A stretch of 64,000 nt of DNA, taken from positions 1 to 64,000 of IMG/VR virus record IMGVR_UViG_3300042319_002138; one strand, written 5' to 3'. Positions 11,958 through 36,620 of this stretch are shown here, one piece after another. The notes under the pieces were generated by a model. It was given only the letters and a program-made list of their open reading frames with translations, was not told where the DNA came from and made no database searches. The position numbers were made by a program, and so were the translations under genes. Position 1 is the stretch's first letter; each line of letters begins with the position of its first letter.

Positions 11958-14234
11958 ATGAATAAAAAATTATTAAATAGAATGTTGGAACTCTCTAACA
12001 TTAAACCAGTGATTAAAGAAGAAAAGATGAGTCTATCTAATTTTGAATTGGTTAAAGAATCTGTAAACGGTAAAATATATGCTGTTGTAAGAGAACAAAA
12101 TAAATATTATATAAAGAACGCTGATTCTAAAAATAATATCAATGAATCTGATTTTGATTACATTGGTGGTATAGTTAATAAGGGAAAAAAATCTTTTTAT
12201 TCTTATGAAGAGGCGGTTAAACATTTAAATTTAATGTTTGAAGAAATTAATAATCACTATAATGTAGATAATGTTAATTTGTTAGAATCAGATGTTTTAA
12301 ATGAGAAAAAATTTATTTTAAAATTAAAAAACAAAAAAACTGAACCAAAAGCTGAACCAAAAGTTGATAAAGGTGGTTTTGACTTTGGTGGAGACTCTGA
12401 AGAAAAGGAAACTTCTGATAAAGGTGGTTTTGACTTTGGTGGAGGTGATGATACTGAAGATACGGGGGATAGTGAATTTGACTTCGGTGGAGATGAAGAT
12501 ACTGAAGATACTGGTGATGATTCATTTGACTTCGGTGATGATACTGAAGATACAGGAGACGGTGAATTTGATTTTGGTGGAGACGATGAGGGAGTTGATT
12601 CCGAAGAAGACGATACTGATGTAGAAGAATTTGGTGATGATGATATCAAAGATATTCAAAGTACCACAGGTAAATTGGGTCAACAAATTAGAGATGTCGA
12701 GGATTTATCTTCTGATATGCAAAAATGGGTTGCTAAATCAGTTTTATCTGCTATGGATTTAGAAAATATGGATTCTGAAGATAAAAAAGATATTATTCGT
12801 ACAATAAAAAAGAAATCACAAGAAGAACCTGAAGAATCTGATGAAGAGTCTTTTGATTTTGGTGATGAGGAACCTGTAGAGGAATCTTCTTATATGTCTT
12901 ATATGGACGATAAATCATGTACACATTGTAATGGTTCGGGTTATGATGAATTCACTGATGAAACTTGTGAATGGTGTGAGGGTGAAGGAAAATTTATAAA
13001 TCCTAATGACACAAGTAATTATCGTAGATATATGGGTGATGGTACACACGATTCTTACATGAAAGAGAAAAAAGAAAGTTATTCAGATTCAGAATTAGAT
13101 AATTGGTTGCTGGATATGGAAATGGCTGGATTTGTTTCAACACCTTCTTACGAATCATACATGGGAGAAGACAACCCTCATATTGGTGGTGATGAGAATA
13201 TGGTTGATGGTGAATTATTATTAGATTATGATGATGAAAATTTATATGGTTTAAACCTAAATATGAGAAATAATCCTAATTTAGAGTATTCAGAAAATAA
13301 TAACATGAATCGTGGATATGGTAATTATATGTCTGATGTAACAGATAAATTTGAGACATATGAACAAGAAATTGCTTACCAAGATTTGTCGGATATGGCA
13401 TCGGAATATGGTTTTACACTAAGTCTTTGTCACGCTGATAAAACAGAAGACCCTGAAGAATCTACAATCTATTTTGATATCAAAGACGGTAGTAAAAAAT
13501 TATTAAAGGCTAGAATTAACTCTATTGGTAGTCTTGAAATTGGTACAATGAGAGGTAGACATTTTATTGGTGAACCAGTTGACTCTTTATCAGATTTTGA
13601 CGAAACTTTTGACGAAGAAGGAAAATTAAAAGATATGGGACCCCAAAGAGAAAAAGCACCTGAAAAACCTGACCGTGGAACTGAAACAATTCCCGGAACA
13701 CCTACTAAAACACCTGATAGAGAACGTCCTTCTAGAAGACCGTTTAATCCTCCCCCACATATTACGCCAGGTGAGGAACCAGGTCCAAAAGCTAGAGGTA
13801 GAAGATTAAATAATTATGACCCTACAATGGCTCCGGCTCCAGCAAAACAACCTGAAAAACCTGACCGTGGAACTGAGACAGTTCCTGGAACGCCGACTAA
13901 AACGCCTGATAAGGATAGACCATCTAGAAGGCCTTTTAATCCACCTCCTCACATTACGCCAGGAGAAGAACCAGGTCCAAAAGCTAGAGGTAGAAGAAGT
14001 TATATGAGTTATATGGGGGATGAAGATAAAACATCTAAGCCATCTCATGACAAACCTCGAAGACCTGGCCGTAATCCATTTGAAAAACCTATGGGGGATG
14101 AAGATAAAACATCTAAGCCATCTCATCCCAAACCTCGAAGACCTGGCCGTAATCCATTTGAAAAACCTCAAAGACCTGACAGTAATCCATTCAAAAGGCC
14201 TAATAATAATGAAGGTGACGTTAAGTTCTCATAA
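11958..14234 (+). CDS. Large acidic low-complexity protein (probable internal head protein) with DnaJ-type Zn finger
   Basis: FDFGG repeats, two CxxCxGxG, YM[SG]D repeats, Pro/Arg C-terminal repeats. Confidence 0.6.
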   Translation: MNKKLLNRMLELSNIKPVIKEEKMSLSNFELVKESVNGKIYAVVREQNKYYIKNADSKNNINESDFDYIGGIVNKGKKSFYSYEEAVKHLNLMFEEINNHYNVDNVNLLESDVLNEKKFILKLKNKKTEPKAEPKVDKGGFDFGGDSEEKETSDKGGFDFGGGDDTEDTGDSEFDFGGDEDTEDTGDDSFDFGDDTEDTGDGEFDFGGDDEGVDSEEDDTDVEEFGDDDIKDIQSTTGKLGQQIRDVEDLSSDMQKWVAKSVLSAMDLENMDSEDKKDIIRTIKKKSQEEPEESDEESFDFGDEEPVEESSYMSYMDDKSCTHCNGSGYDEFTDETCEWCEGEGKFINPNDTSNYRRYMGDGTHDSYMKEKKESYSDSELDNWLLDMEMAGFVSTPSYESYMGEDNPHIGGDENMVDGELLLDYDDENLYGLNLNMRNNPNLEYSENNNMNRGYGNYMSDVTDKFETYEQEIAYQDLSDMASEYGFTLSLCHADKTEDPEESTIYFDIKDGSKKLLKARINSIGSLEIGTMRGRHFIGEPVDSLSDFDETFDEEGKLKDMGPQREKAPEKPDRGTETIPGTPTKTPDRERPSRRPFNPPPHITPGEEPGPKARGRRLNNYDPTMAPAPAKQPEKPDRGTETVPGTPTKTPDKDRPSRRPFNPPPHITPGEEPGPKARGRRSYMSYMGDEDKTSKPSHDKPRRPGRNPFEKPMGDEDKTSKPSHPKPRRPGRNPFEKPQRPDSNPFKRPNNNEGDVKFS
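13659..13997 (+). repeat. Imperfect ~147-bp intragenic duplication (13659-13805 / 13851-13997)
   Basis: Encodes PEKPDRGTET.PGTPTKTPD..RPSRRPFNPPPHITPGEEPGPKARGRR twice, with mostly synonymous differences. Confidence 0.9.
14013..14168 (+). repeat. 78-bp near-perfect tandem duplication
   Basis: MGDEDKTSKPSH.KPRRPGRNPFEKP x2, differing at one codon. Confidence 0.9.
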
Positions 14235-27751: not shown

Positions 27752-29551
27752 ATGGGATATTTATTAAAATCTGGAGAGGTTGGTAATATCGGATTAAAGC
27801 ACCAAAAAGCTATCCGTGAGGCAACTGTAAACAAATGGAATGACCTTGGGTTCTTAGAAGGACTTACAGGACATGTACGTGAGAATATGGCTTTGTTGTA
27901 TGAAAACCAAGCATCTGTTCTTATCAATGAGACTGACACATCGGGTGGTGCATCTACTGGTTCTTTTGAAACTGTAGTTTTCCCTATCGTAAGACGTGTA
28001 TTCTCTAAATTATTAGCTAACGACATCGTGTCTGTACAAGCGTTGAACTTACCTATCGGTAAATTGTTCTACTTTGTACCTAAGATTTCTGAAAGAATCG
28101 AAGCTACTGAAGGTGAAAGCACAGTTTATAAGCACGGTGAACCAATCGTTACACCTTGTCTTTCTGTAGATAACGCAACTTGTCCTGAGACTACATATGT
28201 AGAATGTGCTAAAAATCTTTACGATAGATTTTACAATGATGGTTTATATGACCAATCAAAAGGTAAAATCACTTTAGTTGTTACTAACGGTGTACCAGTT
28301 ATTTGGACATCTTGTACAACAGGTAACGAATTTACAGATGGTGTATCAGCTTTTGCTGGTGACGGTTCTGTTAGAACTCAAATCCTTGAATTAACAGGAT
28401 TTAACAATAATGGTCAAGGTAGACTTTTAGGTCCTGATGGAAATGAAATGGATACTGAGGCTTTCTTAGCTTCTTTAGCTGTTACTGTCGGTGGTGGTAG
28501 TCTTAAAGATAAAGATGGTGAAGTTATTTACGCTCCAGGTGATGAAGTTCCTGTAAGAGTTGTAACACAAAGATATGGTAAAGGTATTGTTAATTATGGT
28601 GATATTTGTACTGGTGAAGGTATTATGTATCTTGAAGTAGATTTAACTCACCCTAAGTGTATTACTTGTTCATCAGGTACATTTGATGGTTATATCGGAG
28701 CTCAATCTGGTAATACATCTATCGTACCTGGAGTTGGTGTATCTACATTAGGTGGTGTTAGTTTTGTTATCACTTATAGACAATACGCTGACTTAGAAAT
28801 GGAATCTCAAATGGGTGAAGTTTCTTTCGAATTAGATTCTGTAACGGTATCTGTAACTGAAAGAAAACTAAGAGCTACTTGGACTCCTGAATTAGCACAA
28901 GATGTTAGTGCATTCCACAACATCGACGCTGAAGCTGAATTGACAGCATTACTTTCTGAGCAAGTTGCGGCAGAAATTGACCGTGAAATCTTACGTGACT
29001 TACGTACAGGTGCAGCATGGCAATTACGTTGGGATTACAACGGATGGAAGAGACTACCTAACAACAACGGTTACACTCAAAAAGACTGGAACCAAACGTT
29101 AGTAACAGCTATCAACCAAATCTCAGCACAAATTCACAAAGCTACATTGAGAGGTGGAGCTAACTTCGTAGTTGTATCTTCTGAAGTATCTGCTGTTTTT
29201 GATGATTTAGAATACTTCCACGTATCTAACGCTTCTCCTGAGCAAGACCAATATAACATGGGTATCGAAAGAGTAGGTTCACTTTCAGGAAGATATACTA
29301 TCTACCGTGACCCTTACGCACCAGCATACTCTGTATTGATTGGACACAAAGGAAAATCATTGTTAGACACAGGTTACATCTACGCACCGTATGTACCTCT
29401 ACAATTAACACCTACAATGTACAATCCGTTTAACTTTGTACCTGTTAAAGGTATCATGACTCGTTACGCCAAAAAAATGGTGAACAACAGGTTTTACGGC
29501 CATATCCGTGTAGACGGTTTACGTACATTTGACGTAAGAGAATTAAGATAA
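27752..29551 (+). CDS. gp23: Major capsid protein (T4 gp23-like)
   Basis: LLYENQ, PIVRRVF, RKLRATWTPELAQD..AFHNIDAEAEL, GYIYAPYVPL, GIMTRY. Confidence 0.95.
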   Translation: MGYLLKSGEVGNIGLKHQKAIREATVNKWNDLGFLEGLTGHVRENMALLYENQASVLINETDTSGGASTGSFETVVFPIVRRVFSKLLANDIVSVQALNLPIGKLFYFVPKISERIEATEGESTVYKHGEPIVTPCLSVDNATCPETTYVECAKNLYDRFYNDGLYDQSKGKITLVVTNGVPVIWTSCTTGNEFTDGVSAFAGDGSVRTQILELTGFNNNGQGRLLGPDGNEMDTEAFLASLAVTVGGGSLKDKDGEVIYAPGDEVPVRVVTQRYGKGIVNYGDICTGEGIMYLEVDLTHPKCITCSSGTFDGYIGAQSGNTSIVPGVGVSTLGGVSFVITYRQYADLEMESQMGEVSFELDSVTVSVTERKLRATWTPELAQDVSAFHNIDAEAELTALLSEQVAAEIDREILRDLRTGAAWQLRWDYNGWKRLPNNNGYTQKDWNQTLVTAINQISAQIHKATLRGGANFVVVSSEVSAVFDDLEYFHVSNASPEQDQYNMGIERVGSLSGRYTIYRDPYAPAYSVLIGHKGKSLLDTGYIYAPYVPLQLTPTMYNPFNFVPVKGIMTRYAKKMVNNRFYGHIRVDGLRTFDVRELR

Positions 29552-29574
29552 TAAATTCTTAAAACTATAATACT

Positions 29575-29603
29575 AAGAGGGACTTCGGTCCCTCTTTTTT
29601 TTT
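29575..29603 (+). terminator. Strong intrinsic terminator after MCP
   Basis: agagggac-ttcg-gtccctct with cUUCGg tetraloop and T-run. Confidence 0.9.
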
Positions 29604-29646
29604 GTATTATTTACAATAATATATTTTATGGGTATATTTATATTAT

Positions 29647-30345
29647 ATGGGAAAAAAGAAAATTGAAATACCTGAAGATGTTTTATCAGAAATGATAAGA
29701 TTATATAATGAAGACTATATTGGTACACCTTCATTATCTGATAGATTTGGTTATCATAAATCTATTATTTTAAGAAGTTTTAAAGATAAAGGTGTACAAC
29801 TAGGTCCATCTGGCCGTAAATGGACTGGTGGTAAAGAAGAGGCAGCTAAAAAATATCACTCTAAACCTGAAGTTAAAAAAAGAAAAAGTGATAACCACAA
29901 AATATGGTCAGAAAAAAACCGTGAACATCTACGAGAATACCACACCAAATGGAGAGAAGAAAATCGTGAAGACTTAAATGAGTACAAACGTATCTACGAA
30001 AAAACAAAAAAAGATTCCGACCCATCATATCGATTGGCATGTTATACAAGAACAGCTGTTTACACTTGTTTAAAAGAAAGAGATGTAACAAAATATAAAA
30101 GTACTTTTGATTTATTACCTTATTCTTTGGAGGAATTAATCACCCATTTGGAATCCCAATTTAAAGAAGATATGACATGGGATAACTATGGTGAGTGGCA
30201 TGTTGACCATATTAAACCTATGACTTCATTTAATATCCAATCACCTGAAGATAAATCTTTTCAAGAGTGTTGGTCGTTAAATAATTTACAACCTCTATGG
30301 GGTGTGGAAAATCTTTCCAAAGGTTCAAGATATTTATTAATATGA
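29647..30345 (+). CDS. Free-standing HNH (homing) endonuclease
   Basis: WHVDHIKP...NLQPLW..ENLSK, basic helical N-terminal region. Confidence 0.8.
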   Translation: MGKKKIEIPEDVLSEMIRLYNEDYIGTPSLSDRFGYHKSIILRSFKDKGVQLGPSGRKWTGGKEEAAKKYHSKPEVKKRKSDNHKIWSEKNREHLREYHTKWREENREDLNEYKRIYEKTKKDSDPSYRLACYTRTAVYTCLKERDVTKYKSTFDLLPYSLEELITHLESQFKEDMTWDNYGEWHVDHIKPMTSFNIQSPEDKSFQECWSLNNLQPLWGVENLSKGSRYLLI

Positions 30346-30689
30346 ATCTACGTAAGATTATAAAAGAAGAGATTAATGATTTTGATTGGATTCCCAAAAA
30401 AAGTATTATAACCAATGAGTTTGATTTTGATGGGGAGTTAAATACTGACGAGGCTAATCAAAATTTTAAGAATGAAGTTAATGGGTATTATGCTATTTCA
30501 ACACCAAAGGGTAAGGAATCTCCTGAAACAATAATAGCTTATGGACCTGTATTCTATATAAAACAAGTTTTAAGATATATTGATAGTTTAAACGACCCTT
30601 ATTGGGGTGGCATGGATTTATATCTTGGGGTTGTTAAATACTCTAGGAAAGATAAAGATAACGTATTATCTTTAATAAAATATTATTAA
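30342..30689 (+). CDS. Hypothetical protein with RKIIKEE..DFDW leader
   Basis: Start reassigned to ATG 30342 (ATGA overlap with the HNH stop). Confidence 0.7.
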   Translation: MNLRKIIKEEINDFDWIPKKSIITNEFDFDGELNTDEANQNFKNEVNGYYAISTPKGKESPETIIAYGPVFYIKQVLRYIDSLNDPYWGGMDLYLGVVKYSRKDKDNVLSLIKYY

Positions 30690-30690
30690 T

Positions 30691-31335
30691 ATGAATCTTA
30701 AAAAAATCATAAAAGAAGAGGTTGACGAATTTGATTGGGCTCGTGAAATAGAACCAAAATGGGAACCCCAAGTCGGTGATAAATTTATTTGTAAACATGG
30801 TTTTAATAGGAATAGTATGTCAGATTATTATGGGGGTGCCGCATATGTGGAAGGAAAAGTCTATACTATATATAGAATTACACCCGACATTCATAATGAT
30901 GATAATGTCATATTATGGGGTAAAGAAGATGAAGATAACAACGGTGTTTATAAAAGAGCCACTGAACTTTATTTTGAATCTCTAAGTGAATCTAAAGAAG
31001 ATGATTTTGAATGGGCTAGAGGTGAGGTTATTTTTACAATTAATGATATTATTGGTAAAAAATGTACTTATAGAGAAAATAATTTAGTAGACCTAGAACA
31101 AGAGTATGAAATCTCCCAACTTAAAAGAGGTGACGTTGATTTGGGTCCCATTAGATATAATGATAAGTATTCTTATTGGGTGGTGACTAGATTAGAAGGT
31201 GATGATGCTTTTATTAATTTAGCTGATGGTACTGAATTAGATTATAAAATAGAAGAAATAGAACAATACGTTAATTTAGGTGTATGGGTTTTATTTGATG
31301 ATAATGGTAATATTTTAAACGATTTTTATAAATAA
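30691..31335 (+). CDS. Two-domain hypothetical protein, each domain preceded by a DF[DE]WAR motif
   Basis: MNLKKIIKEEVDEFDWARE ... LSESKEDDFEWARG. Confidence 0.7.
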   Translation: MNLKKIIKEEVDEFDWAREIEPKWEPQVGDKFICKHGFNRNSMSDYYGGAAYVEGKVYTIYRITPDIHNDDNVILWGKEDEDNNGVYKRATELYFESLSESKEDDFEWARGEVIFTINDIIGKKCTYRENNLVDLEQEYEISQLKRGDVDLGPIRYNDKYSYWVVTRLEGDDAFINLADGTELDYKIEEIEQYVNLGVWVLFDDNGNILNDFYK

Positions 31336-31338
31336 TAC

Positions 31339-31370
31339 AAAAAAGGGAACTTCTCAGTCCCCCTTATTTT
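31339..31370. terminator. Imperfect terminator-like hairpin
   Basis: aaaaaagggaac-ttctca-gtcccccttatttt. Confidence 0.5.
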
Positions 31371-31380
31371 GTGATAGATA

Positions 31381-31492
31381 GGTATTATTCTTTAATACCT
31401 TTTTTGGTTGCCGCCTCTTTGTTTGTAGGGCCGTTCTCCAATTTGTCATTGATAATGGTCATAATCTCACTTCCAACCAAACTATAAACTTT
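31381..31492 (-). pseudogene. Orphan copy of the last 35 codons of the 33402..34142 gene (direct repeat with 33398-33509)
   Basis: 112 bp with 7 mismatches; encodes KVYSLVGSEIMTIINDKLENGPTNKEAATKKGIKE*. Confidence 0.9.
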
Positions 31493-31557
31493 ATTTACGT
31501 TTTTCTTAGGGACAACACATATTTATATATAAATAATATTTTTTAAAAAATAAAAAA

Positions 31558-31974
31558 ATGGCAGAAGAAATGCAAGAAATACAAGATGTATGTTTATGTT
31601 TTGAGGGAGATAAAGCACAAACACGAGTTGGTGGTGAATGGTTTGTTACGGCAGCGGATGTTAGTTTTTCTGGTTCCGTTCAGAGTGGTAAAATTCAATT
31701 TACTGGTGAACAATCAATGTCTGTAAAGGACAAGCCTGAATTTAATTTGGCTGTTAAACCTGGTGGGTACGAAAATGAGCTTATTAAATACCCTGGTAGT
31801 GTTTTAGACACACCAGATAAATTACCTTTACCTGTTGAAATTAGACAGTTAACACCACAACAAAAAGTAGATGTTATTAAACGAAATGCTAGAAGAATAA
31901 AAGATAATTTCCAACGAACTTTACAAAACCGTTTTGGTAGCCAAACATCAGTAATTAATAACACAAATACTTAA
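31558..31974 (+). CDS. Hypothetical protein (cassette gene 1)
   Basis: 138 aa; behind ATATTTAT at 31519. Confidence 0.7.
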   Translation: MAEEMQEIQDVCLCFEGDKAQTRVGGEWFVTAADVSFSGSVQSGKIQFTGEQSMSVKDKPEFNLAVKPGGYENELIKYPGSVLDTPDKLPLPVEIRQLTPQQKVDVIKRNARRIKDNFQRTLQNRFGSQTSVINNTNT

Positions 31975-31976
31975 TT

Positions 31977-32453
31977 ATGGCAGTAGAAACAATAAAAGAA
32001 AAGATAAAAATAGGTCAATTATTAGATAAAAATAATAAACCTATTGAAATAAGTTCAAATTTTGAGAATGTAGTTTTAACCTTTAATGGGGTTAAAGTAA
32101 TCAAAGAAAAAACTACTTACAGTGAGATTGTAAAAGCGACCACAGATAAAGATGGTTTTATATACCTTAATAACGAAGATGAAATTAAAAAAGTTAGTGA
32201 GGTGTTAAAAAAAGAAACAGTAACTTTTAATACATCAAGTATTTTTGGTTATGAGGATAGTATAAATATAGTGACTAAAGAAAATTTTGATTCAAAAAAT
32301 TTAAAAATTGTTTTAACAATTAAATCTTATACACCCGAAGAAAAGGTTGATTTAATAATTAAAAACGCTAAAGCACTAAAAGAAAAAGTAGTAAAAGCTT
32401 TAGAGACACGTTTTAAACCGTCATTAGGGGAAGCAACACAAGCAACTCAATAA
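31977..32453 (+). CDS. Hypothetical protein (cassette gene 2; C-terminus similar to gene 1)
   Basis: TPEEKVDLIIKNA...LETRF versus TPQQKVDVIKRNA...LQNRF. Confidence 0.7.
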   Translation: MAVETIKEKIKIGQLLDKNNKPIEISSNFENVVLTFNGVKVIKEKTTYSEIVKATTDKDGFIYLNNEDEIKKVSEVLKKETVTFNTSSIFGYEDSINIVTKENFDSKNLKIVLTIKSYTPEEKVDLIIKNAKALKEKVVKALETRFKPSLGEATQATQ

Positions 32454-32498
32454 TTTTTAAAAACAATAAAAAATAATAATTTAATAAAATAAAAAAAA

Positions 32499-33341
32499 AT
32501 GAACTTTTATAAAAATACTAAACAATTTTACGCACTAGTCGGTAATAATGTTGCTGGTAACAGTAATCTAACTATAGATGAATTTTTAAACCAATTAGAA
32601 AATAAATATTCTAATGCTGGTTTAATCTTTAATTATTTAATAGATAGGGGTGTAAATGGTAATCTTCAAATTAAAGCATTATTAGCTAGACCTGAATATT
32701 TTTCTTTTATAGATAAATCTTTGACGTTGGCTAGTGCTACAGATACTACTGATTTTTACCAAAAGGTAGTTGAAGTCAATTCTCTTTACACAGAAGAAAA
32801 TAAGTTTTCACTTTTAGCAAACGATGTTGAAGCTTTTGGTTATAGTGGTGGGACTTATGTATACACAACTTTATTAGAATCAAAAGAATCTGCTTTAATC
32901 CAAGATACTATTGCATTTAGTGGTGACGTTGCTGTTAAAAGTTACAGGTTAGTTGGTAGTGCATATTTAGATGACAGTACCGGATTTTATGTTTTACCTT
33001 TAGGTTTAATTACTATAGAAGGTGATTATATTGGGGCCAGTCTTTCTTCTGGTAAAAACACTGTGTCAGCACAAGACACACTTTTTGATAACGTTGTAAC
33101 ACCTTTAGCTCCTGGTTGTTTTGTTACTGACTCATCTAGTGGTGATTTTGAAGTGGCTCCTATTGCTTTCATATTTGCTGATAATACCTCTTTAGGTCCA
33201 AATGATTATGAGTTATACCTAGTAGTTGCGTCAATTAGTTTCTCTATTGGTAGTACGGTTGTGACTATTGACCAAGAATTTACTATTTCAACATTAACAA
33301 AAGATTTTAGTAACGTTAAAGCTAATTTTATTAATATATAA
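32499..33341 (+). CDS. Hypothetical protein (cassette gene 3)
   Basis: 280-aa ORF. Confidence 0.7.
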   Translation: MNFYKNTKQFYALVGNNVAGNSNLTIDEFLNQLENKYSNAGLIFNYLIDRGVNGNLQIKALLARPEYFSFIDKSLTLASATDTTDFYQKVVEVNSLYTEENKFSLLANDVEAFGYSGGTYVYTTLLESKESALIQDTIAFSGDVAVKSYRLVGSAYLDDSTGFYVLPLGLITIEGDYIGASLSSGKNTVSAQDTLFDNVVTPLAPGCFVTDSSSGDFEVAPIAFIFADNTSLGPNDYELYLVVASISFSIGSTVVTIDQEFTISTLTKDFSNVKANFINI

Positions 33342-33364
33342 TTTAATATTATTTAATTAAAAAT

Positions 33365-33397
33365 AAAAAAGGGACTTATAAAAAGTCCCTTTTTTTT
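33365..33397. terminator. Bidirectional intrinsic terminator
   Basis: aaaaaagggactt-ataaa-aagtcccttttttt. Confidence 0.8.
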
Positions 33398-33401
33398 GGT
33401 A

Positions 33402-34142
33402 TCATTCTTTAATACCTTTTTTAGATGCGGCCTCTTTGTTGGTAGGTCCGTTCTCCAATTTGTCATTGATAATGGTCATAATCTCACTTCCGACCAAACT
33501 ATAAACTTTCATGGCGTTGCTAACGTTCATTTGTGTGTCAACAACATCCCACAATGTAATACCGTCTTGTTTGTTACGGTCATTGTGAAATGCTACTTTT
33601 GAGAAAATGTTATTACGAGCTTCACTATCTTTGACATTTTTATCAATCAAATACACTAGAACACCGTTCTCAGTATATTGTTTGAAGTATCTACCGTAGT
33701 TTTGGTCTTCACTTGCCACACACCACTTAGTTGCTTTACCATAAAGGTTTGAACTACGTGTTGAAAGTGGGAATATAACCAACCAACGGTCATCTTCATA
33801 AAGAACTTCGGTTTCTTTTTTCTTAACCTCAGAACGAGTTATTTTTTCTTTAGCCGTTTTTACAGCTTCGATAATATCTTGATTTGATTCGTAAGAATAG
33901 ATATCTTTATTATCCAGTAAATTACGTTGTGAAAGGTCCTCAAAATCTTTGATTACCTCAAACATTTCTTTAAATGTTTCATTACGTAATTCATTATTAA
34001 TCCAGTCTACCCATTCAGCGGTACATTTAATCATGAATGGTAGGTACTTGTTGGACTTACTTGGGTCCATTGAAGACAAAACCTCGATAACGTCTACTAC
34101 GTAACTTGGATTTTGTACTTTTAAATCTTTAACTCTTGCCAT
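33402..34142 (-). CDS. Hypothetical phage protein with YGxxTKWC motif
   Basis: 246-aa ORF behind a host-type promoter; likely an early gene. Confidence 0.7.
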   Translation of the reverse strand: MARVKDLKVQNPSYVVDVIEVLSSMDPSKSNKYLPFMIKCTAEWVDWINNELRNETFKEMFEVIKDFEDLSQRNLLDNKDIYSYESNQDIIEAVKTAKEKITRSEVKKKETEVLYEDDRWLVIFPLSTRSSNLYGKATKWCVASEDQNYGRYFKQYTENGVLVYLIDKNVKDSEARNNIFSKVAFHNDRNKQDGITLWDVVDTQMNVSNAMKVYSLVGSEIMTIINDKLENGPTNKEAASKKGIKE

Positions 34143-34176
34143 ATAAATTGTTTTTTTTTCTTAAACGTTAACACTA

Positions 34177-34208
34177 CAAATATAAGTATCTTTTTTTAAT
34201 CAATCAAA
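34177..34208 (-). promoter_or_regulatory. Bacteroidota sigma-A consensus promoter (-33/-7)
   Basis: Minus strand TTTG-N20-TATATTTG, exact match to TTTG...TAnnTTTG. Confidence 0.7.
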
Positions 34209-34261
34209 GGGTAAACCTAAAATTTTTCTTTTTTCTGGGATATTTATATAAAAACATTAAA

Positions 34262-34690
34262 ATGAAAAAAATAATCAAACTTAACGAGCAAGATTTAGAG
34301 AGGTTAGTTAAAAAAGTTATTGCTGAAGAAGAGAATTCTTCACAAGGTAAAACTCCTGAAAAGAAGACAACAATGACAAAACACCCAGCTTATAGTGTTA
34401 TTGATAAATTAGGTAGAGATTTGGAATCTTTAAAAACAGAATTTAAAGATGGTATCGCTGATGCTGTTTCTGGTTCTGACGGTTATCATAGTGAAATAGA
34501 TACATTTTCTAGTGACTTTACAAAATTCATTGGTAAACTTGAGGATTTAAAGAAAAAAATTAATGATTACCAAGTTATTGATAATGCCAGACATAAAGAA
34601 ATGAAAGAAAAACAAAAACAACAGGATAAGTACCAACAGCATATGAGGGTAAGAGAAGCCGGAAGAAATGGTTCAAATTATTCTTACTAA
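34262..34690 (+). CDS. Hypothetical protein with KKIIKLNEQDL leader
   Basis: 142 aa; behind ATATTTAT at 34240. Confidence 0.7.
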   Translation: MKKIIKLNEQDLERLVKKVIAEEENSSQGKTPEKKTTMTKHPAYSVIDKLGRDLESLKTEFKDGIADAVSGSDGYHSEIDTFSSDFTKFIGKLEDLKKKINDYQVIDNARHKEMKEKQKQQDKYQQHMRVREAGRNGSNYSY

Positions 34691-35082
34691 TGAAAAGACG
34701 AGATAAACTAAAAGTAATTCAGGAAGCTAATCAAAGATTGGAAGAAAAGTTTTTAAATGAAAAAGCTATAGGTTTTCAAACTGCTGGTGATAATAGAGAT
34801 AAGGACACAAATTCAGAAAGAGGTAAATTAGGATTTAAACCATCTAAAGACCTTGAAGATAAAATCATTAGTTTAATGATTAAATTAAAAGCTATGGCTG
34901 AAAAAGGTGAATCTGGTGAAAAAGATACCGCTATGAAAAAACTTAATGACTTAGCTAAAAAATACGGGATAAGTACAAAAAACCTTGGTGAAAAAAGTTC
35001 TAAGGTTGGGTTTAAATTCTCTTGGGAAAATGGTGACTATGACATAGAGGATATCACTAAAGAAGTTAATAAATTAAATTAA
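34690..35082 (+). CDS. Hypothetical protein with DUF2786-like segment
   Basis: KLKAMAEKG..GEKDTAMKKLNDLAKKYGI. Confidence 0.55.
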   Translation: MKRRDKLKVIQEANQRLEEKFLNEKAIGFQTAGDNRDKDTNSERGKLGFKPSKDLEDKIISLMIKLKAMAEKGESGEKDTAMKKLNDLAKKYGISTKNLGEKSSKVGFKFSWENGDYDIEDITKEVNKLN

Positions 35083-35083
35083 T

Positions 35084-35115
35084 AAAAAAAAGGTCTGATT
35101 TCTCAGACCTTTTTT
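35084..35115. terminator. Bidirectional intrinsic terminator
   Basis: aaaaaaggtctga-tttc-tcagacctttttt. Confidence 0.85.
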
Positions 35116-35117
35116 AT

Positions 35118-36620
35118 TTAACACCAATCTTTTTCAGAAACAATTTCAAATTGTATGATATCGTGGTAAGTTCTAATTTCACTACCTGATTCTAATTTAA
35201 ACTCTAAATAATAATCATTAGGTATAAACCAAGAAGTATCAATTAAAAAGAAGTTACTATCTTCAGTTCTATTTAATTCACCCCAAGGAAGATATTCTAT
35301 TTGTGTTTCACCTTCTTTAATGTATATTCTATAATACATTTTATCAACAGGTTTATAATCAGATGTATAAGGTATTGTAGCCTGAACCTCAACTCTTCTA
35401 GTATCACCACGTTTTATTTTTTCTTTACGTTGTATTCCATTAAAAGAAAAATGATAGTCATATATTGATATGTTTTTACCATTACCAACGCCTCTACCAC
35501 TTCTATCATTAGAACCAATATTATAATAAGAATTTTTTTCTTGAATAATGAAGTCTAACTCAATATCACCTACGTTATTACCGTTTATAGTTACATTTTC
35601 CCAAACATCTCTAAACTGAACATTACCACAGTAACCATTAACAGGGTCACTAGATACGTTTAATTCAACATAATAAACACCTGTAGTTGTTTGTTTTATA
35701 TCTATAGCCGGTATTATCTGATATACGTTATCATTTTGGTCGTATATACTAACAGAATCTATGGTAGCGTTAACTCTTTCACCACCAGCATTAACAAATA
35801 GATAAAGTCTGTTTGTTTTATCTAAATAAAATTCACATCTATCATCTTTTATTAAATCATTATATACACTCTCCATAAAAGGTTCATAAACTGTTTGGGT
35901 TTCTCTAGAGAAAAATCCTACATAACAAAAAGATTCTTGTGGAGCTGATTCTAAACCTGGTGAAAAAGCTACACCCATTGTACAAGCAGTAACACTATTT
36001 AAAATTAAACCATTAACATAGTTAGTAACGTCTACACAAAAGTTTTCATTTCCCTTATCAAAGTGTTGTTCACCTTTAACTAAGTTGGTTGTTGTTCCTG
36101 TGTATCCTGTTGATGAACCTGGCCACCACATAGTAGGGTCTATATAAACACCTTGTTGGTACCAAGATGTAAACCCTACACGTTCAACCCAGTTTGCTGG
36201 TGATTCACAATATACTTGGTCACCCGTATCACAAGTTAGGTAAGTTGTTGGTACATAATCATATCCATTACCCTCATCCCAAAATTCAGGTACTTCAAAA
36301 AGTATTAAATCAAAACTTGTAGCTCTAGATACTTCACCACAAGAACTTGAAACTGTTTTACAATACAATTCCCTGTCAAAACAAGATGTATTTGTTAAAT
36401 TAATTTTATGTGTTAGATTAGATAAATTATACTCACCACTCGCAACTTTAGATATTAATTCAGTCAAATCCAAATTAAAAATATATCTAGTATAAATTAA
36501 GTCATTTACATTATTAGACCCCCCATGAAATAACTCTACTATTGGGTTTCTGCCTGTATTGACACAAGAATTTCTTATAATTACAGTATCTTTATCAAAG
36601 TAAGTTCTGTATATACTCAT
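35118..36620 (-). CDS. Cys-rich structural protein (tail/baseplate candidate)
   Basis: 500 aa, beta-rich, behind the late motif; 12 Cys counted. Confidence 0.55.
   Translation of the reverse strand: MSIYRTYFDKDTVIIRNSCVNTGRNPIVELFHGGSNNVNDLIYTRYIFNLDLTELISKVASGEYNLSNLTHKINLTNTSCFDRELYCKTVSSSCGEVSRATSFDLILFEVPEFWDEGNGYDYVPTTYLTCDTGDQVYCESPANWVERVGFTSWYQQGVYIDPTMWWPGSSTGYTGTTTNLVKGEQHFDKGNENFCVDVTNYVNGLILNSVTACTMGVAFSPGLESAPQESFCYVGFFSRETQTVYEPFMESVYNDLIKDDRCEFYLDKTNRLYLFVNAGGERVNATIDSVSIYDQNDNVYQIIPAIDIKQTTTGVYYVELNVSSDPVNGYCGNVQFRDVWENVTINGNNVGDIELDFIIQEKNSYYNIGSNDRSGRGVGNGKNISIYDYHFSFNGIQRKEKIKRGDTRRVEVQATIPYTSDYKPVDKMYYRIYIKEGETQIEYLPWGELNRTEDSNFFLIDTSWFIPNDYYLEFKLESGSEIRTYHDIIQFEIVSEKDWC

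What the first reader, a model, noticed from the sequence alone, without database searches (positions are those of the whole stretch)
31381..33509. Three-gene cassette flanked by a 112-bp direct repeat that replaces a gene's 3' end
Seen: 31381-31492 and 33398-33509 differ at 7 sites. Five are silent (including TAA/TGA) and two give a single T/S change, so both copies evolved as coding alleles. Each has a terminator-like hairpin downstream. Between them lie an ATATTTAT motif and three unknown genes, with no recognisable integrase or transposase. Inference: the module came from a related phage carrying its own allele of the gene end and restored the ORF on insertion (att-like). It could loop out or amplify by recombination between the repeats.
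Basis: partly seen in the sequence, partly recalled or inferred. Interest (0 to 1): 0.65.

Follow-up and report, generated by a model that had tools for sequence, protein, structure and literature searches.

The report
Recent gene-cassette insertion in lake phage
A freshwater T4-like phage recently gained a 2-kb, three-gene accessory module from a related phage by a sloppy recombination that left the old end of the neighbouring gene behind as an orphan copy; it is a well-resolved but ordinary case of how such phages swap accessory genes.

Summary
Positions 31381-31492 and 33398-33509 are a 112-nt direct repeat with 7 differences. It is the only dispersed repeat above 90% identity in the 226-kb phage genome. 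Copy B is the working 3' end of a minus-strand gene of 246 codons (g246). Copy A is an orphan tail of 36 codons.

Near-identical phages in other lake metagenomes have an exact empty site: one copy, carrying copy A's alleles at all 7 sites. So copy A and its terminator are original. Copy B, its terminator and the three genes came in together as 2,017 bp.

More distant relatives carry the same three genes natively next to g246, with no orphan tail. Their DNA upstream of the cassette contains TATAAACTTT, the same 10 nt as g246 codons 211-214, exactly at the window's left junction. The best model is therefore recombination with a cassette-bearing relative: homologous in g246, and illegitimate at a 10-nt microhomology on the other side. 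There is no integrase, so the "att-like" reading is not supported. No sign of loop-out was found, since none of the empty-site contigs has an A/B chimeric copy.

The cassette has its own promoter-like motif and a bidirectional terminator. Its largest protein ends in a domain shared with collagen-like tail-fibre tips. This is a new member of a known kind.

The parts
30691..31335 (+). p214, the left flanking gene. In empty-site relatives it is convergent with g246.
   Evidence: ORF. It sits directly next to g246 in L003 and L043-L049.
31342..31365 (-). Original terminator-like hairpin of g246. It is now downstream of the orphan tail.
   Evidence: -15.7 kcal/mol, z -4.0 on the minus strand. It is identical in the empty-site genomes.
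31381..31492 (-). Copy A: the orphaned original 3' end of g246 (35 codons plus TAA at 31385-31387, plus 4 nt). No start codon or upstream frame precedes it.
   Evidence: It is 112/112 identical to the single copy in L044-L047 and 111/112 to L003.
31483..31492 (.). TATAAACTTT, the 10-nt microhomology at the left junction. The same 10 nt are at 33500-33509 in copy B.
   Evidence: Donor-type L033 reads these 10 nt directly before the cassette's upstream DNA. Window 31483-31560 is 100% identical to L033 6988-7065. There are only 3 occurrences in the window.
31493..33509 (.). The acquired 2,017-bp segment: upstream region, three genes, terminator and the donor allele of the g246 end. The phase is ambiguous by the 10-17 identical nt.
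   Evidence: It is absent from L003. blastn shows the two flanks overlapping by exactly the 112 nt. Divergence from the empty-site allele is 8 differences in 33403-33492, and the next difference is at 33558.
31519..31535 (+). Promoter-like motifs upstream of c138: ATATTTAT (31519-31526) and TATAAATA (31528-31535).
   Evidence: ATATTTAT lies in gene orientation within 80 nt upstream of 14 of 66 ORFs, mostly at -13 to -30. TATAAATA alone is not enriched.
31558..31974 (+). c138, cassette gene 1. It is a paralogue of c158.
   Evidence: (phmmer E 5e-6 between the two). No family match.
31977..32453 (+). c158, cassette gene 2. It has a beta-rich N-terminal part and a long C-terminal helix.
   Evidence: AF2 pLDDT 57; helix 120-145.
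32499..33341 (+). c280, cassette gene 3. It has an N-terminal helical domain and a C-terminal beta-sandwich related to the tips of collagen-like tail fibres.
   Evidence: hhalign gives 97.7% probability, E 1.3e-12, and 95.9%, E 5.5e-9.
33365..33395 (.). Bidirectional terminator-like hairpin that came in with the cassette. It lies between the convergent genes c280 and g246.
   Evidence: -16.5 and -15.6 kcal/mol on the two strands. The same hairpin follows g246 in donor-type L033 and L042.
33398..33509 (-). Copy B: the donor allele, now the working 3' end of g246 (stop TGA at 33402-33404).
33402..34142 (-). g246, a conserved gene of unknown function whose end was exchanged.
   Evidence: Homologues at 55-100% identity occur in 24 IMG/VR loci, always at this position. 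Its only family matches are phrog_17056 and phrog_28193, both of unknown function.

Best explanation
This is a recent gain of an accessory-gene cassette. It lies in the hypervariable region between the gp23-type major capsid gene and the g246 and baseplate genes of a freshwater T4-like phage.

The donor was a related phage in which the operon c138-c158-c280 sits natively next to g246, convergent with it and sharing one bidirectional terminator. The recipient was a phage like L003, in which g246 is followed directly by its terminator and p214.

During mixed infection, recombination used g246 as the homologous arm. The other join was illegitimate. Donor DNA just upstream of the cassette's promoter region was joined to codon 211 of the recipient's g246, at a shared 10-nt stretch (TATAAACTTT). 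That join fell 112 nt inside the gene rather than beyond it. As a result the recipient's last 36 codons and terminator were kept as a dead orphan (copy A). The gene now ends with the donor's allele and terminator (copy B).

The foreign tract ends within 65 nt of the same point in g246. This fits repair of a single break there: one end invades the donor's g246 and copies through the cassette, and the new strand is captured by the other end through the microhomology.

The cassette is a self-contained unit, with a promoter-like motif, three genes and a terminator. It probably encodes virion-surface or fibre-tip type proteins.

Shown: the insertion polymorphism, its polarity, the donor-type architecture and the junction microhomology. 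Inferred: the break-repair route and the function of the proteins.
For: An empty site occurs in near-identical genomes, and the two flanks overlap by exactly the 112 nt. The single copy equals copy A at all 7 sites in L003 and L043-L049.

Copy B differs from that allele at 8 sites within 33403-33492. After that the next differences are at 33558 and 33741, which is background density. The 7 differences between the copies fit purifying selection, p about 3e-4.

The native arrangement p214-F2-c138-c158-c280-g246, without an orphan tail, is seen in L033, L034 and L035. L036, L042 and one further contig also have the cassette beside g246.

Window 31483-34329 aligns to L033 6988-9831. The 10 nt TATAAACTTT precede the cassette's upstream DNA in L033 and end copy A in the window.

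Copy B shares its Ser codon, ACC codon, TGA stop and hairpin with L033 and L042.

The region between g246 and the capsid gene holds 0 to 6 genes across 24 relatives. A second indel in the same region (p130a, 349 bp) is bounded by 56-nt coding repeats, with a chimeric single copy in L044 and L047.

No recombinase was found. The promoter-like motif is, and the hairpins.
Against: The direct donor was not found. The nearest sampled cassette is only about 86% identical in DNA, and its c280 is at most 74% identical in protein. The microhomology is therefore read from a relative of the donor, not from the donor itself.

Patchy clusters of differences occur elsewhere between the window and L003. So the foreign tract ending near the junction could be coincidence, with a rough chance of 0.1. 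In that case a single unequal crossover would do as well as break repair.

The empty-site contigs may descend from one ancestor and are not 9 independent witnesses of polarity.

The functions of the three proteins rest on one remote domain match and on models of modest confidence (pLDDT 71 and 57).
Confidence: 0.7

Rival explanations
1. Mini-circle route, like the PeSL mini-circles of T4-type phages. In the donor, the 2,017 bp between the two 10-nt direct repeats (one in g246, one upstream of the cassette) looped out as a circle. The circle then integrated, Campbell-style, into the recipient's g246 end by homologous crossover within the 112-nt homology.
For: A donor-type genome has the 10-nt stretch at both ends of exactly this segment. 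The product would have the observed structure. Arbiol et al. 2010 (PMC2839356) report such circles in T4-type phages. Recombination between short coding repeats does occur in this region.
Against: The crossover would have to fall in the outermost 17 of the 112 nt, because copy A is purely recipient-type and copy B is donor-type at every informative site. The longest identical block, 44 nt, would be the favoured place. No circle or tandem junction was seen, but the contig data could not have shown one.
Confidence: 0.13
2. Reverse polarity. The cassette-bearing arrangement is the older one in this clade, and the empty-site genomes are revertants that lost the cassette by recombination between copies A and B.
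For: The repeats are direct and 94% identical, so deletion is mechanically possible. A neighbouring 349-bp unit shows a single chimeric repeat of the kind that such a deletion, or the reverse insertion, would leave. The empty-site contigs may share one origin.
Against: Every empty-site copy is copy-A type at all 7 sites, including the innermost one. The crossover would therefore have been confined to the last 17 nt. A pre-insertion state identical to these genomes must have existed in any case. Copy A is 112/112 identical to the empty-site allele of L044-L047, so the event is recent.
Confidence: 0.1
3. Site-specific (att-like) integration. On this reading the cassette is an integrative element whose attachment site is the end of g246, like phage 21 or e14 in icd, or islands in tRNA genes.
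For: The element brings a substitute gene end that keeps the target ORF intact, and direct repeats flank it.
Against: There is no integrase, transposase or other recombinase in the 2 kb or in the neighbouring genes. The genome is a lytic-type T4-like phage. The cassette is native to this locus in relatives and lacks the second repeat there. In L036 the small F2 gene lies between the cassette and g246, so the cassette does not keep a fixed attachment point. The junction is a 10-nt microhomology.
Confidence: 0.03
4. Assembly artefact: a chimera of two co-occurring strains.
For: Both forms circulate in lake-water metagenomes, and the repeat contains a 44-nt identical block.
Against: The junction shares only 10 nt with donor-type DNA, too few for a k-mer assembler to jump. 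Unitigs in two runs cross it. At least 13 contigs from different samples and assemblers agree to the base.
Confidence: 0.01

Closest known systems
Modular shuffling in the hyperplastic regions of T4-type phages (PeSL cassettes; Arbiol et al. 2010, PMC2839356; Comeau et al. 2014, PMC4122927)
   Same: Accessory genes of unknown function are gained or lost between conserved core genes in otherwise near-identical T4-like phages. The gained unit brings its own transcription signals. Short direct repeats flank the unit, and recombination between them is the proposed route.
   Different: Here the repeat is not a promoter plus stem-loop motif. It is the coding 3' end of a neighbouring gene in two allelic versions. 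The two hairpins are unrelated in sequence. One junction is a 10-nt microhomology. No mini-circle was observed.
Integrative elements that replace the 3' end of their target gene (phage 21 and e14 in icd; islands in tRNA or tmRNA genes). This comparison is from general knowledge.
   Same: The incoming DNA carries a slightly different copy of the gene's end, so the ORF stays intact and the old end is left as a flanking direct repeat.
   Different: There is no integrase and no lysogeny. The cassette is native to the locus in relatives, and the junction is by microhomology.
Morons of lambdoid phages (Hendrix and colleagues). This comparison is from general knowledge.
   Same: It is an extra transcription unit, present in one genome and absent from a close relative at the same place, with a predicted promoter in front and a terminator behind.
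   Different: It holds three genes instead of one. Its base composition is not distinct (0.29 against 0.305 GC). It sits in a T4-like lytic genome, and it interrupts and rebuilds a gene end rather than sitting cleanly between genes.
Microhomology-mediated illegitimate recombination and break repair in phage T4. This comparison is from general knowledge.
   Same: There is a join at about 10 shared nucleotides, combined with homologous exchange on the other side. A partial duplication is the by-product.
   Different: It is seen here as a natural polymorphism between wild lake phages, with both parental architectures sampled, rather than as a laboratory deletion or duplication.

Membership tests
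T4-like myovirus (gp23-type capsid) | The major capsid protein belongs to the Gp23 family | tested here: met
   phrog_138 major head protein, E 1.1e-62. PF07068 Gp23 is recorded on the same product.
Hyperplastic-region indel of T4-type phages | It lies in a stretch of variable gene content between conserved core genes | tested here: met
   Between g246 and the capsid gene, 24 relatives hold 0 to 6 genes from at least 17 families.
Hyperplastic-region indel of T4-type phages | It is present or absent between otherwise near-identical genomes, with exact breakpoints | tested here: met
   L003 is 98.2% identical to the window on one flank and 94.4% on the other, and the flanks overlap by the 112 nt.
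PeSL-mediated shuffling | The flanking repeats are conserved units of an early sigma-70 promoter plus a stem-loop | tested here: not met
   The repeat is coding sequence. The hairpins differ in sequence. Sigma-70-like sites are not above chance (29 found, 35.7 expected).
PeSL-mediated shuffling | Mini-circles of the excised unit exist | not testable with these tools
   Only Logan contigs were on offer, and unitigs break at the shared 44-mer.
Site-specific integrative element that restores the target gene's end | It encodes an integrase or recombinase | tested here: not met
   No such match for c138, c158, c280 or their neighbours in Pfam, PHROGs, NCBIfam or PADLOC.
Site-specific integrative element that restores the target gene's end | It brings a substitute gene end, so the ORF stays intact | tested here: met
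   Copy B completes g246 with one Thr-to-Ser change.
Site-specific integrative element that restores the target gene's end | The same element with the same attachment site occurs at the target in unrelated backgrounds, or as a free form | tested here: not met
   In relatives the cassette sits at this locus without a second repeat. In L036 it is separated from g246 by the F2 gene.
Moron | It has its own promoter and terminator | tested here: inconclusive
   A promoter-like motif shared with 14 of 66 ORFs and a strong hairpin. There are no expression data.
Moron | Its base composition differs from that of the host genome | tested here: not met
   The insert is 0.29 GC and the window 0.305.
Homing-endonuclease-driven insertion | An endonuclease gene lies inside the mobile segment | tested here: not met
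   There is none in 31493-33509. An HNH/endonuclease VII-like gene lies 1.1 kb to the left, at 29647-30345 (phrog_1035, E 1.2e-14).
Phage tail-fibre tip domain (c280 C-terminus) | Homology to the C-terminal domain that follows collagen-like repeats in fibre proteins | tested here: met
   Profile hit to P0028 residues 1231-1351, E 5e-11. The collagen repeat and tail-fibre PHROGs lie just upstream in P0028. hhalign gives 97.7% and 95.9% probability.
Phage tail-fibre tip domain (c280 C-terminus) | The protein is part of the virion and binds a receptor | not testable with these tools
   This needs virion proteomics or adsorption assays.

The most novel reading that the evidence does not exclude
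The 2,017-bp unit is a recombinase-free mobile mini-circle. It carries a copy of its target gene's end as a built-in homology arm, so it can hop between related phages, always rebuilding g246, and can leave again by recombination between the two gene ends. It would toggle an adhesin-type module on and off in a lake phage population.
Probability: 0.08. Interest if true: 0.65.

Novelty: new member of a known kind. Interest (0 to 1): 0.33.

Why it matters
It gives a base-resolved natural example of how T4-like phages acquire accessory genes. All three states were sampled in the wild: the recipient, the recombinant and the donor-type architecture. The junction shows which kind of recombination was used.

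Both forms, with and without the cassette, occur in lake-water metagenomes as otherwise nearly identical genomes. The largest cassette protein ends in a fibre-tip type domain. The pair is therefore a ready-made natural experiment on whether such a module changes adsorption or host range. It does not reveal a new kind of mobile element.

Tried and rejected
**Phage GenBank records.** A blastn search of 29500-35200 found only short matches to the HNH gene.

**Single-protein scans of IMG/VR.** Scans with c138, c158 and c280 found only the window's own strain. The donor-type loci came from the word search and exact-protein look-ups instead.

**Read evidence for a deletion or circle.**
- 24 lake-water runs hold the stretch, but all are served as Logan contigs.
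- Laying four of them on 3,501 letters (within the operators' limit) showed no joints. The unitigs end at the 44-nt block shared by the two copies, so this says nothing either way.

**TATAAATA as a T4 late promoter.** There are 26 matches against 17.8 expected, which is not significant.

**Function of the proteins.**
- c138, c158 and g246: Pfam, NCBIfam, PADLOC and PDB sequence and profile searches gave nothing above noise.
- c280 fold searches: Foldseek against the PDB gave TM below 0.25. The Foldseek-independent search gave a best Z of 7.6 to generic beta-sandwiches (virus P domain, CBM, cohesin, adhesins), which is noise level by the tool's own note. The best BFVD hit is an unnamed protein.
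- The c158 model is too poor to search with (pLDDT 57). The Atlas model's likeness to carboxypeptidase-regulatory-like sandwiches has TM of 0.5 or less.

**The direct donor.** All contigs carrying the exact c280 or the exact g246 have the window's arrangement.

**Not used.** No other genetic code was used, and no spliced model or complex prediction was needed.
Full report
**1. What is in the sequence**

The window is the first 64 kb of a 226,303-bp viral contig from a lake-water metagenome. It has a Gp23-family major capsid gene at 27752-29551 (phrog_138, E 1e-62; PF07068). That makes it a T4-like phage. The window's GC content is 0.305.

The reported repeat is real. Positions 31381-31492 (copy A) and 33398-33509 (copy B) are 112 nt long, start 2,017 nt apart, and differ at 7 sites. 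Homology ends sharply at the inner edge.

Copy B is the end of a minus-strand gene, g246 (33402-34142). Copy A is the same 35 codons plus a stop, with nothing in front of it.

Of the 7 differences, four are synonymous, one is TAA versus TGA, and two make a single Thr/Ser change. Seven random changes would keep the frame, the stop and at most one residue change only 0.03% of the time. Both copies therefore diverged as working gene ends in different genomes.

Each copy is followed by a strong hairpin with flanking A and T runs, and the two hairpins are unrelated in sequence.

Between the copies lie three plus-strand genes:
- c138 (31558-31974)
- c158 (31977-32453)
- c280 (32499-33341)

This is the only dispersed repeat above 90% identity in the whole genome.

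**2. It is not an artefact**

The same structure, base for base at the repeats, is on at least 13 contigs from different samples and assemblers. Logan unitigs from two runs cross the copy A/cassette junction without a mismatch. The junction shares only 10 nt with anything else, too little for a k-mer assembler to jump.

**3. Empty site and polarity**

L003 is an IMG/VR contig 98% identical to the window to the right of the repeat and 94% identical to the left. It lacks the cassette. The two flanks overlap in it by exactly the 112 nt.

Its single copy has copy A's base at all 7 sites and continues into copy A's hairpin and p214. Nine contigs from at least eight samples carry that g246 protein. 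In every one whose record extends beyond g246, p214 follows it directly. Four of them (L044-L047) are 112/112 identical to copy A.

Against that allele, copy B has 8 differences within 33403-33492. The next differences are at 33558 and 33741, which is background density.

So copy A, its hairpin and p214 are the original context. Copy B, its hairpin and the three genes arrived together as 2,017 bp. The foreign tract ends at, or within 65 nt of, the repeat's inner edge.

**4. Where it came from**

A word search with c280 found homologues of 47-74% identity. Their contigs show the cassette in its native setting:
- In L033, L034 and L035 the order is capsid gene, p130a, p214, a small minus-strand gene (F2, 98 codons), c138 (81% identity), c158 (80%), c280 (70%), then convergent g246 (91%). 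There is no orphan tail.
- L042 and one further contig for which only the gene table was returned also have c280 convergent with g246.
- L012 has a c280 homologue beside g246. Its close relative L015 has lost it but keeps the last ~40 nt of that gene.
- In L036 the F2 gene lies between c280 and g246.

The cassette therefore belongs to this locus in part of the phage group.

Copy B shares its Ser codon, its ACC codon, its TGA stop and its hairpin with L033 and L042, whereas copy A does not.

**5. The junction**

Window 31483-34329 aligns with L033 6988-9831, and the first 78 nt are identical. In L033 the cassette's upstream DNA is preceded by TATAAACTTT. In the recipient-type genomes the same 10 nt are codons 211-214 of g246. 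In the window they are the last 10 nt of copy A.

The left junction is thus a microhomology join between donor-type intergenic DNA and the inside of the recipient's g246. The motif occurs only three times in the window.

No integrase, transposase or other recombinase is in the cassette or next to it.

**6. Mechanism**

The best reading is recombination in a mixed infection between a cassette-less phage and a relative with the native cassette. The exchange was homologous in g246 and illegitimate at the 10-nt stretch.

Both ends of the foreign tract map to the same spot in g246. I therefore favour repair of one break there: one end invades the donor's g246 and copies through the gene end, terminator and cassette, and the other end captures the new strand by microhomology. 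This step is inferred.

A single unequal crossover followed by patchy homogenisation is nearly as good. Clusters of differences are common between these genomes.

A Campbell-type insertion of a 2,017-bp circle would need a crossover in the outermost 17 of the 112 nt. Such circles have been described for PeSL units in T4-type phages (PMC2839356).

The reverse polarity, with empty sites as revertants, needs the same narrow crossover. It is not favoured.

**7. Can it loop out?**

Mechanically, yes. The same region gives a precedent. The 349-bp unit holding p130a is flanked by 56-nt repeats (30334-30389 and 30683-30738, 82% identical) that encode the shared N-terminus of p130a and p214. L044 and L047 have one chimeric copy, left half from the first repeat and right half from the second.

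For the cassette, however, no chimera was found among the empty-site contigs, and the contig-based read data cannot show a deletion or a circle. Loop-out and amplification remain untested possibilities.

**8. What the cassette encodes**

It looks like a self-contained transcription unit.

Only about one such case would be expected from the share of sequence involved. It is therefore probably a promoter element of this phage. The T4 late consensus TATAAATA next to it is not enriched on its own.

*Terminator.* The hairpin at 33365-33395 folds equally well on both strands.

*c138 and c158.* They are paralogues, each with a beta-rich body and a conserved C-terminal helix. No family or fold could be assigned.

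*c280.* It has a helical N-terminal domain and a C-terminal beta-sandwich (AF2 mean pLDDT 71). An exhaustive profile search found only 37 related clusters among 1.8 billion representatives, and it showed the two halves recombined with other partners.

The C-terminal half matches the last ~120 residues of two proteins:
- a 1,358-residue protein whose preceding segment is a collagen repeat that hits tail-fibre PHROGs;
- a 294-residue collagen-like tail-fibre protein.

These matches are. hhalign gives 97.7% probability with E 1e-12, and 95.9% with E 5e-9. Fold searches gave only generic sandwiches.

I infer, with modest confidence, a virion-surface or fibre-tip type function for c280. The function of g246 is unknown.

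**9. Comparison with known systems, and verdict**

The event belongs with accessory-gene turnover in the hyperplastic regions of T4-type phages. It resembles PeSL shuffling and morons in outcome. It resembles integrative elements in icd or tRNA genes only in that a gene end is replaced. It fails the defining tests of the PeSL unit (no promoter/stem-loop repeat) and of site-specific elements (no recombinase, no fixed attachment point).

It is a new, unusually well-documented member of a known kind, not a new kind of element.

Noticed in passing
window 30334-30389 and 30683-30738 (p130a, 30297-30689): There is a second indel in the same region. The 349-bp unit carrying p130a is flanked by 56-nt direct repeats (82% identical) that encode the shared N-terminal motif of p130a and p214. 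Near-identical strains L044 and L047 lack the unit and have one chimeric repeat, its left half like the first copy and its right half like the second.
   Followed up: yes
window 29647-30345: A free-standing HNH/endonuclease VII-like gene (phrog_1035, E 1e-14) lies just after the capsid gene. Among relatives it is present, absent or enlarged (227-573 codons). Differences between the window and L003 pile up in the capsid gene (28000-28800) and in this gene (29800-30000), as would be expected around a homing endonuclease.
   Followed up: partly
window-wide, e.g. 14298, 18889, 20827, 23863, 29634, 31519, 34240, 63565 (+); 10367, 26312, 36637, 40597, 60526 (-): ATATTTAT lies in gene orientation within 80 nt upstream of 14 of 66 ORFs, mostly 13-30 nt before the start codon. 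It is probably a promoter element of this phage. It is not the T4 late consensus read in the same direction.
   Followed up: partly
L012 8837-10356 versus L015 8838-8878: In another pair of relatives, a c280-like gene and a gene of 237 codons between g246 and the capsid gene are missing from L015. L015 keeps the last ~40 nt of the c280-like gene. This looks like a deletion without notable flanking repeats.
   Followed up: partly
L033 6664-6960 and L036 5403-5705: A small gene (F2, about 100 codons) usually follows g246 directly on the same strand. In L036 it still does, with the cassette beyond it. In L033 the cassette lies between g246 and F2. The cassette has therefore taken more than one position within this locus.
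   Followed up: partly
window 32499-33341 (c280) and proteins P0024-P0053: c280 is a two-module protein. Its N-terminal ~130 residues recur on proteins of 547 and 689 residues with other C-termini. Its C-terminal sandwich recurs at the end of fibre-like proteins of up to 1,358 residues. The family is rare: 37 clusters among 1.8 billion representatives.
   Followed up: partly
window 34262-34690 (p142); L033 168-239, 716-814, 9764-9832: The first ~25 residues of p142 recur at the start of several small genes in related loci. This is another short conserved N-terminal coding motif that could serve as recombination homology.
   Followed up: no
G000:C1 107011-112317 (outside the window): There are three tandem paralogous units of about 1.35 kb, 73-77% identical. 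A further pair is at 195046-195548 and 197057-197559.
   Followed up: no
window 13649-14168 (inside ORF 11958-14234): There are internal direct repeats: 157 nt at 85% identity and 79 nt at 97% identity. They suggest a repetitive domain in a 758-codon gene.
   Followed up: no
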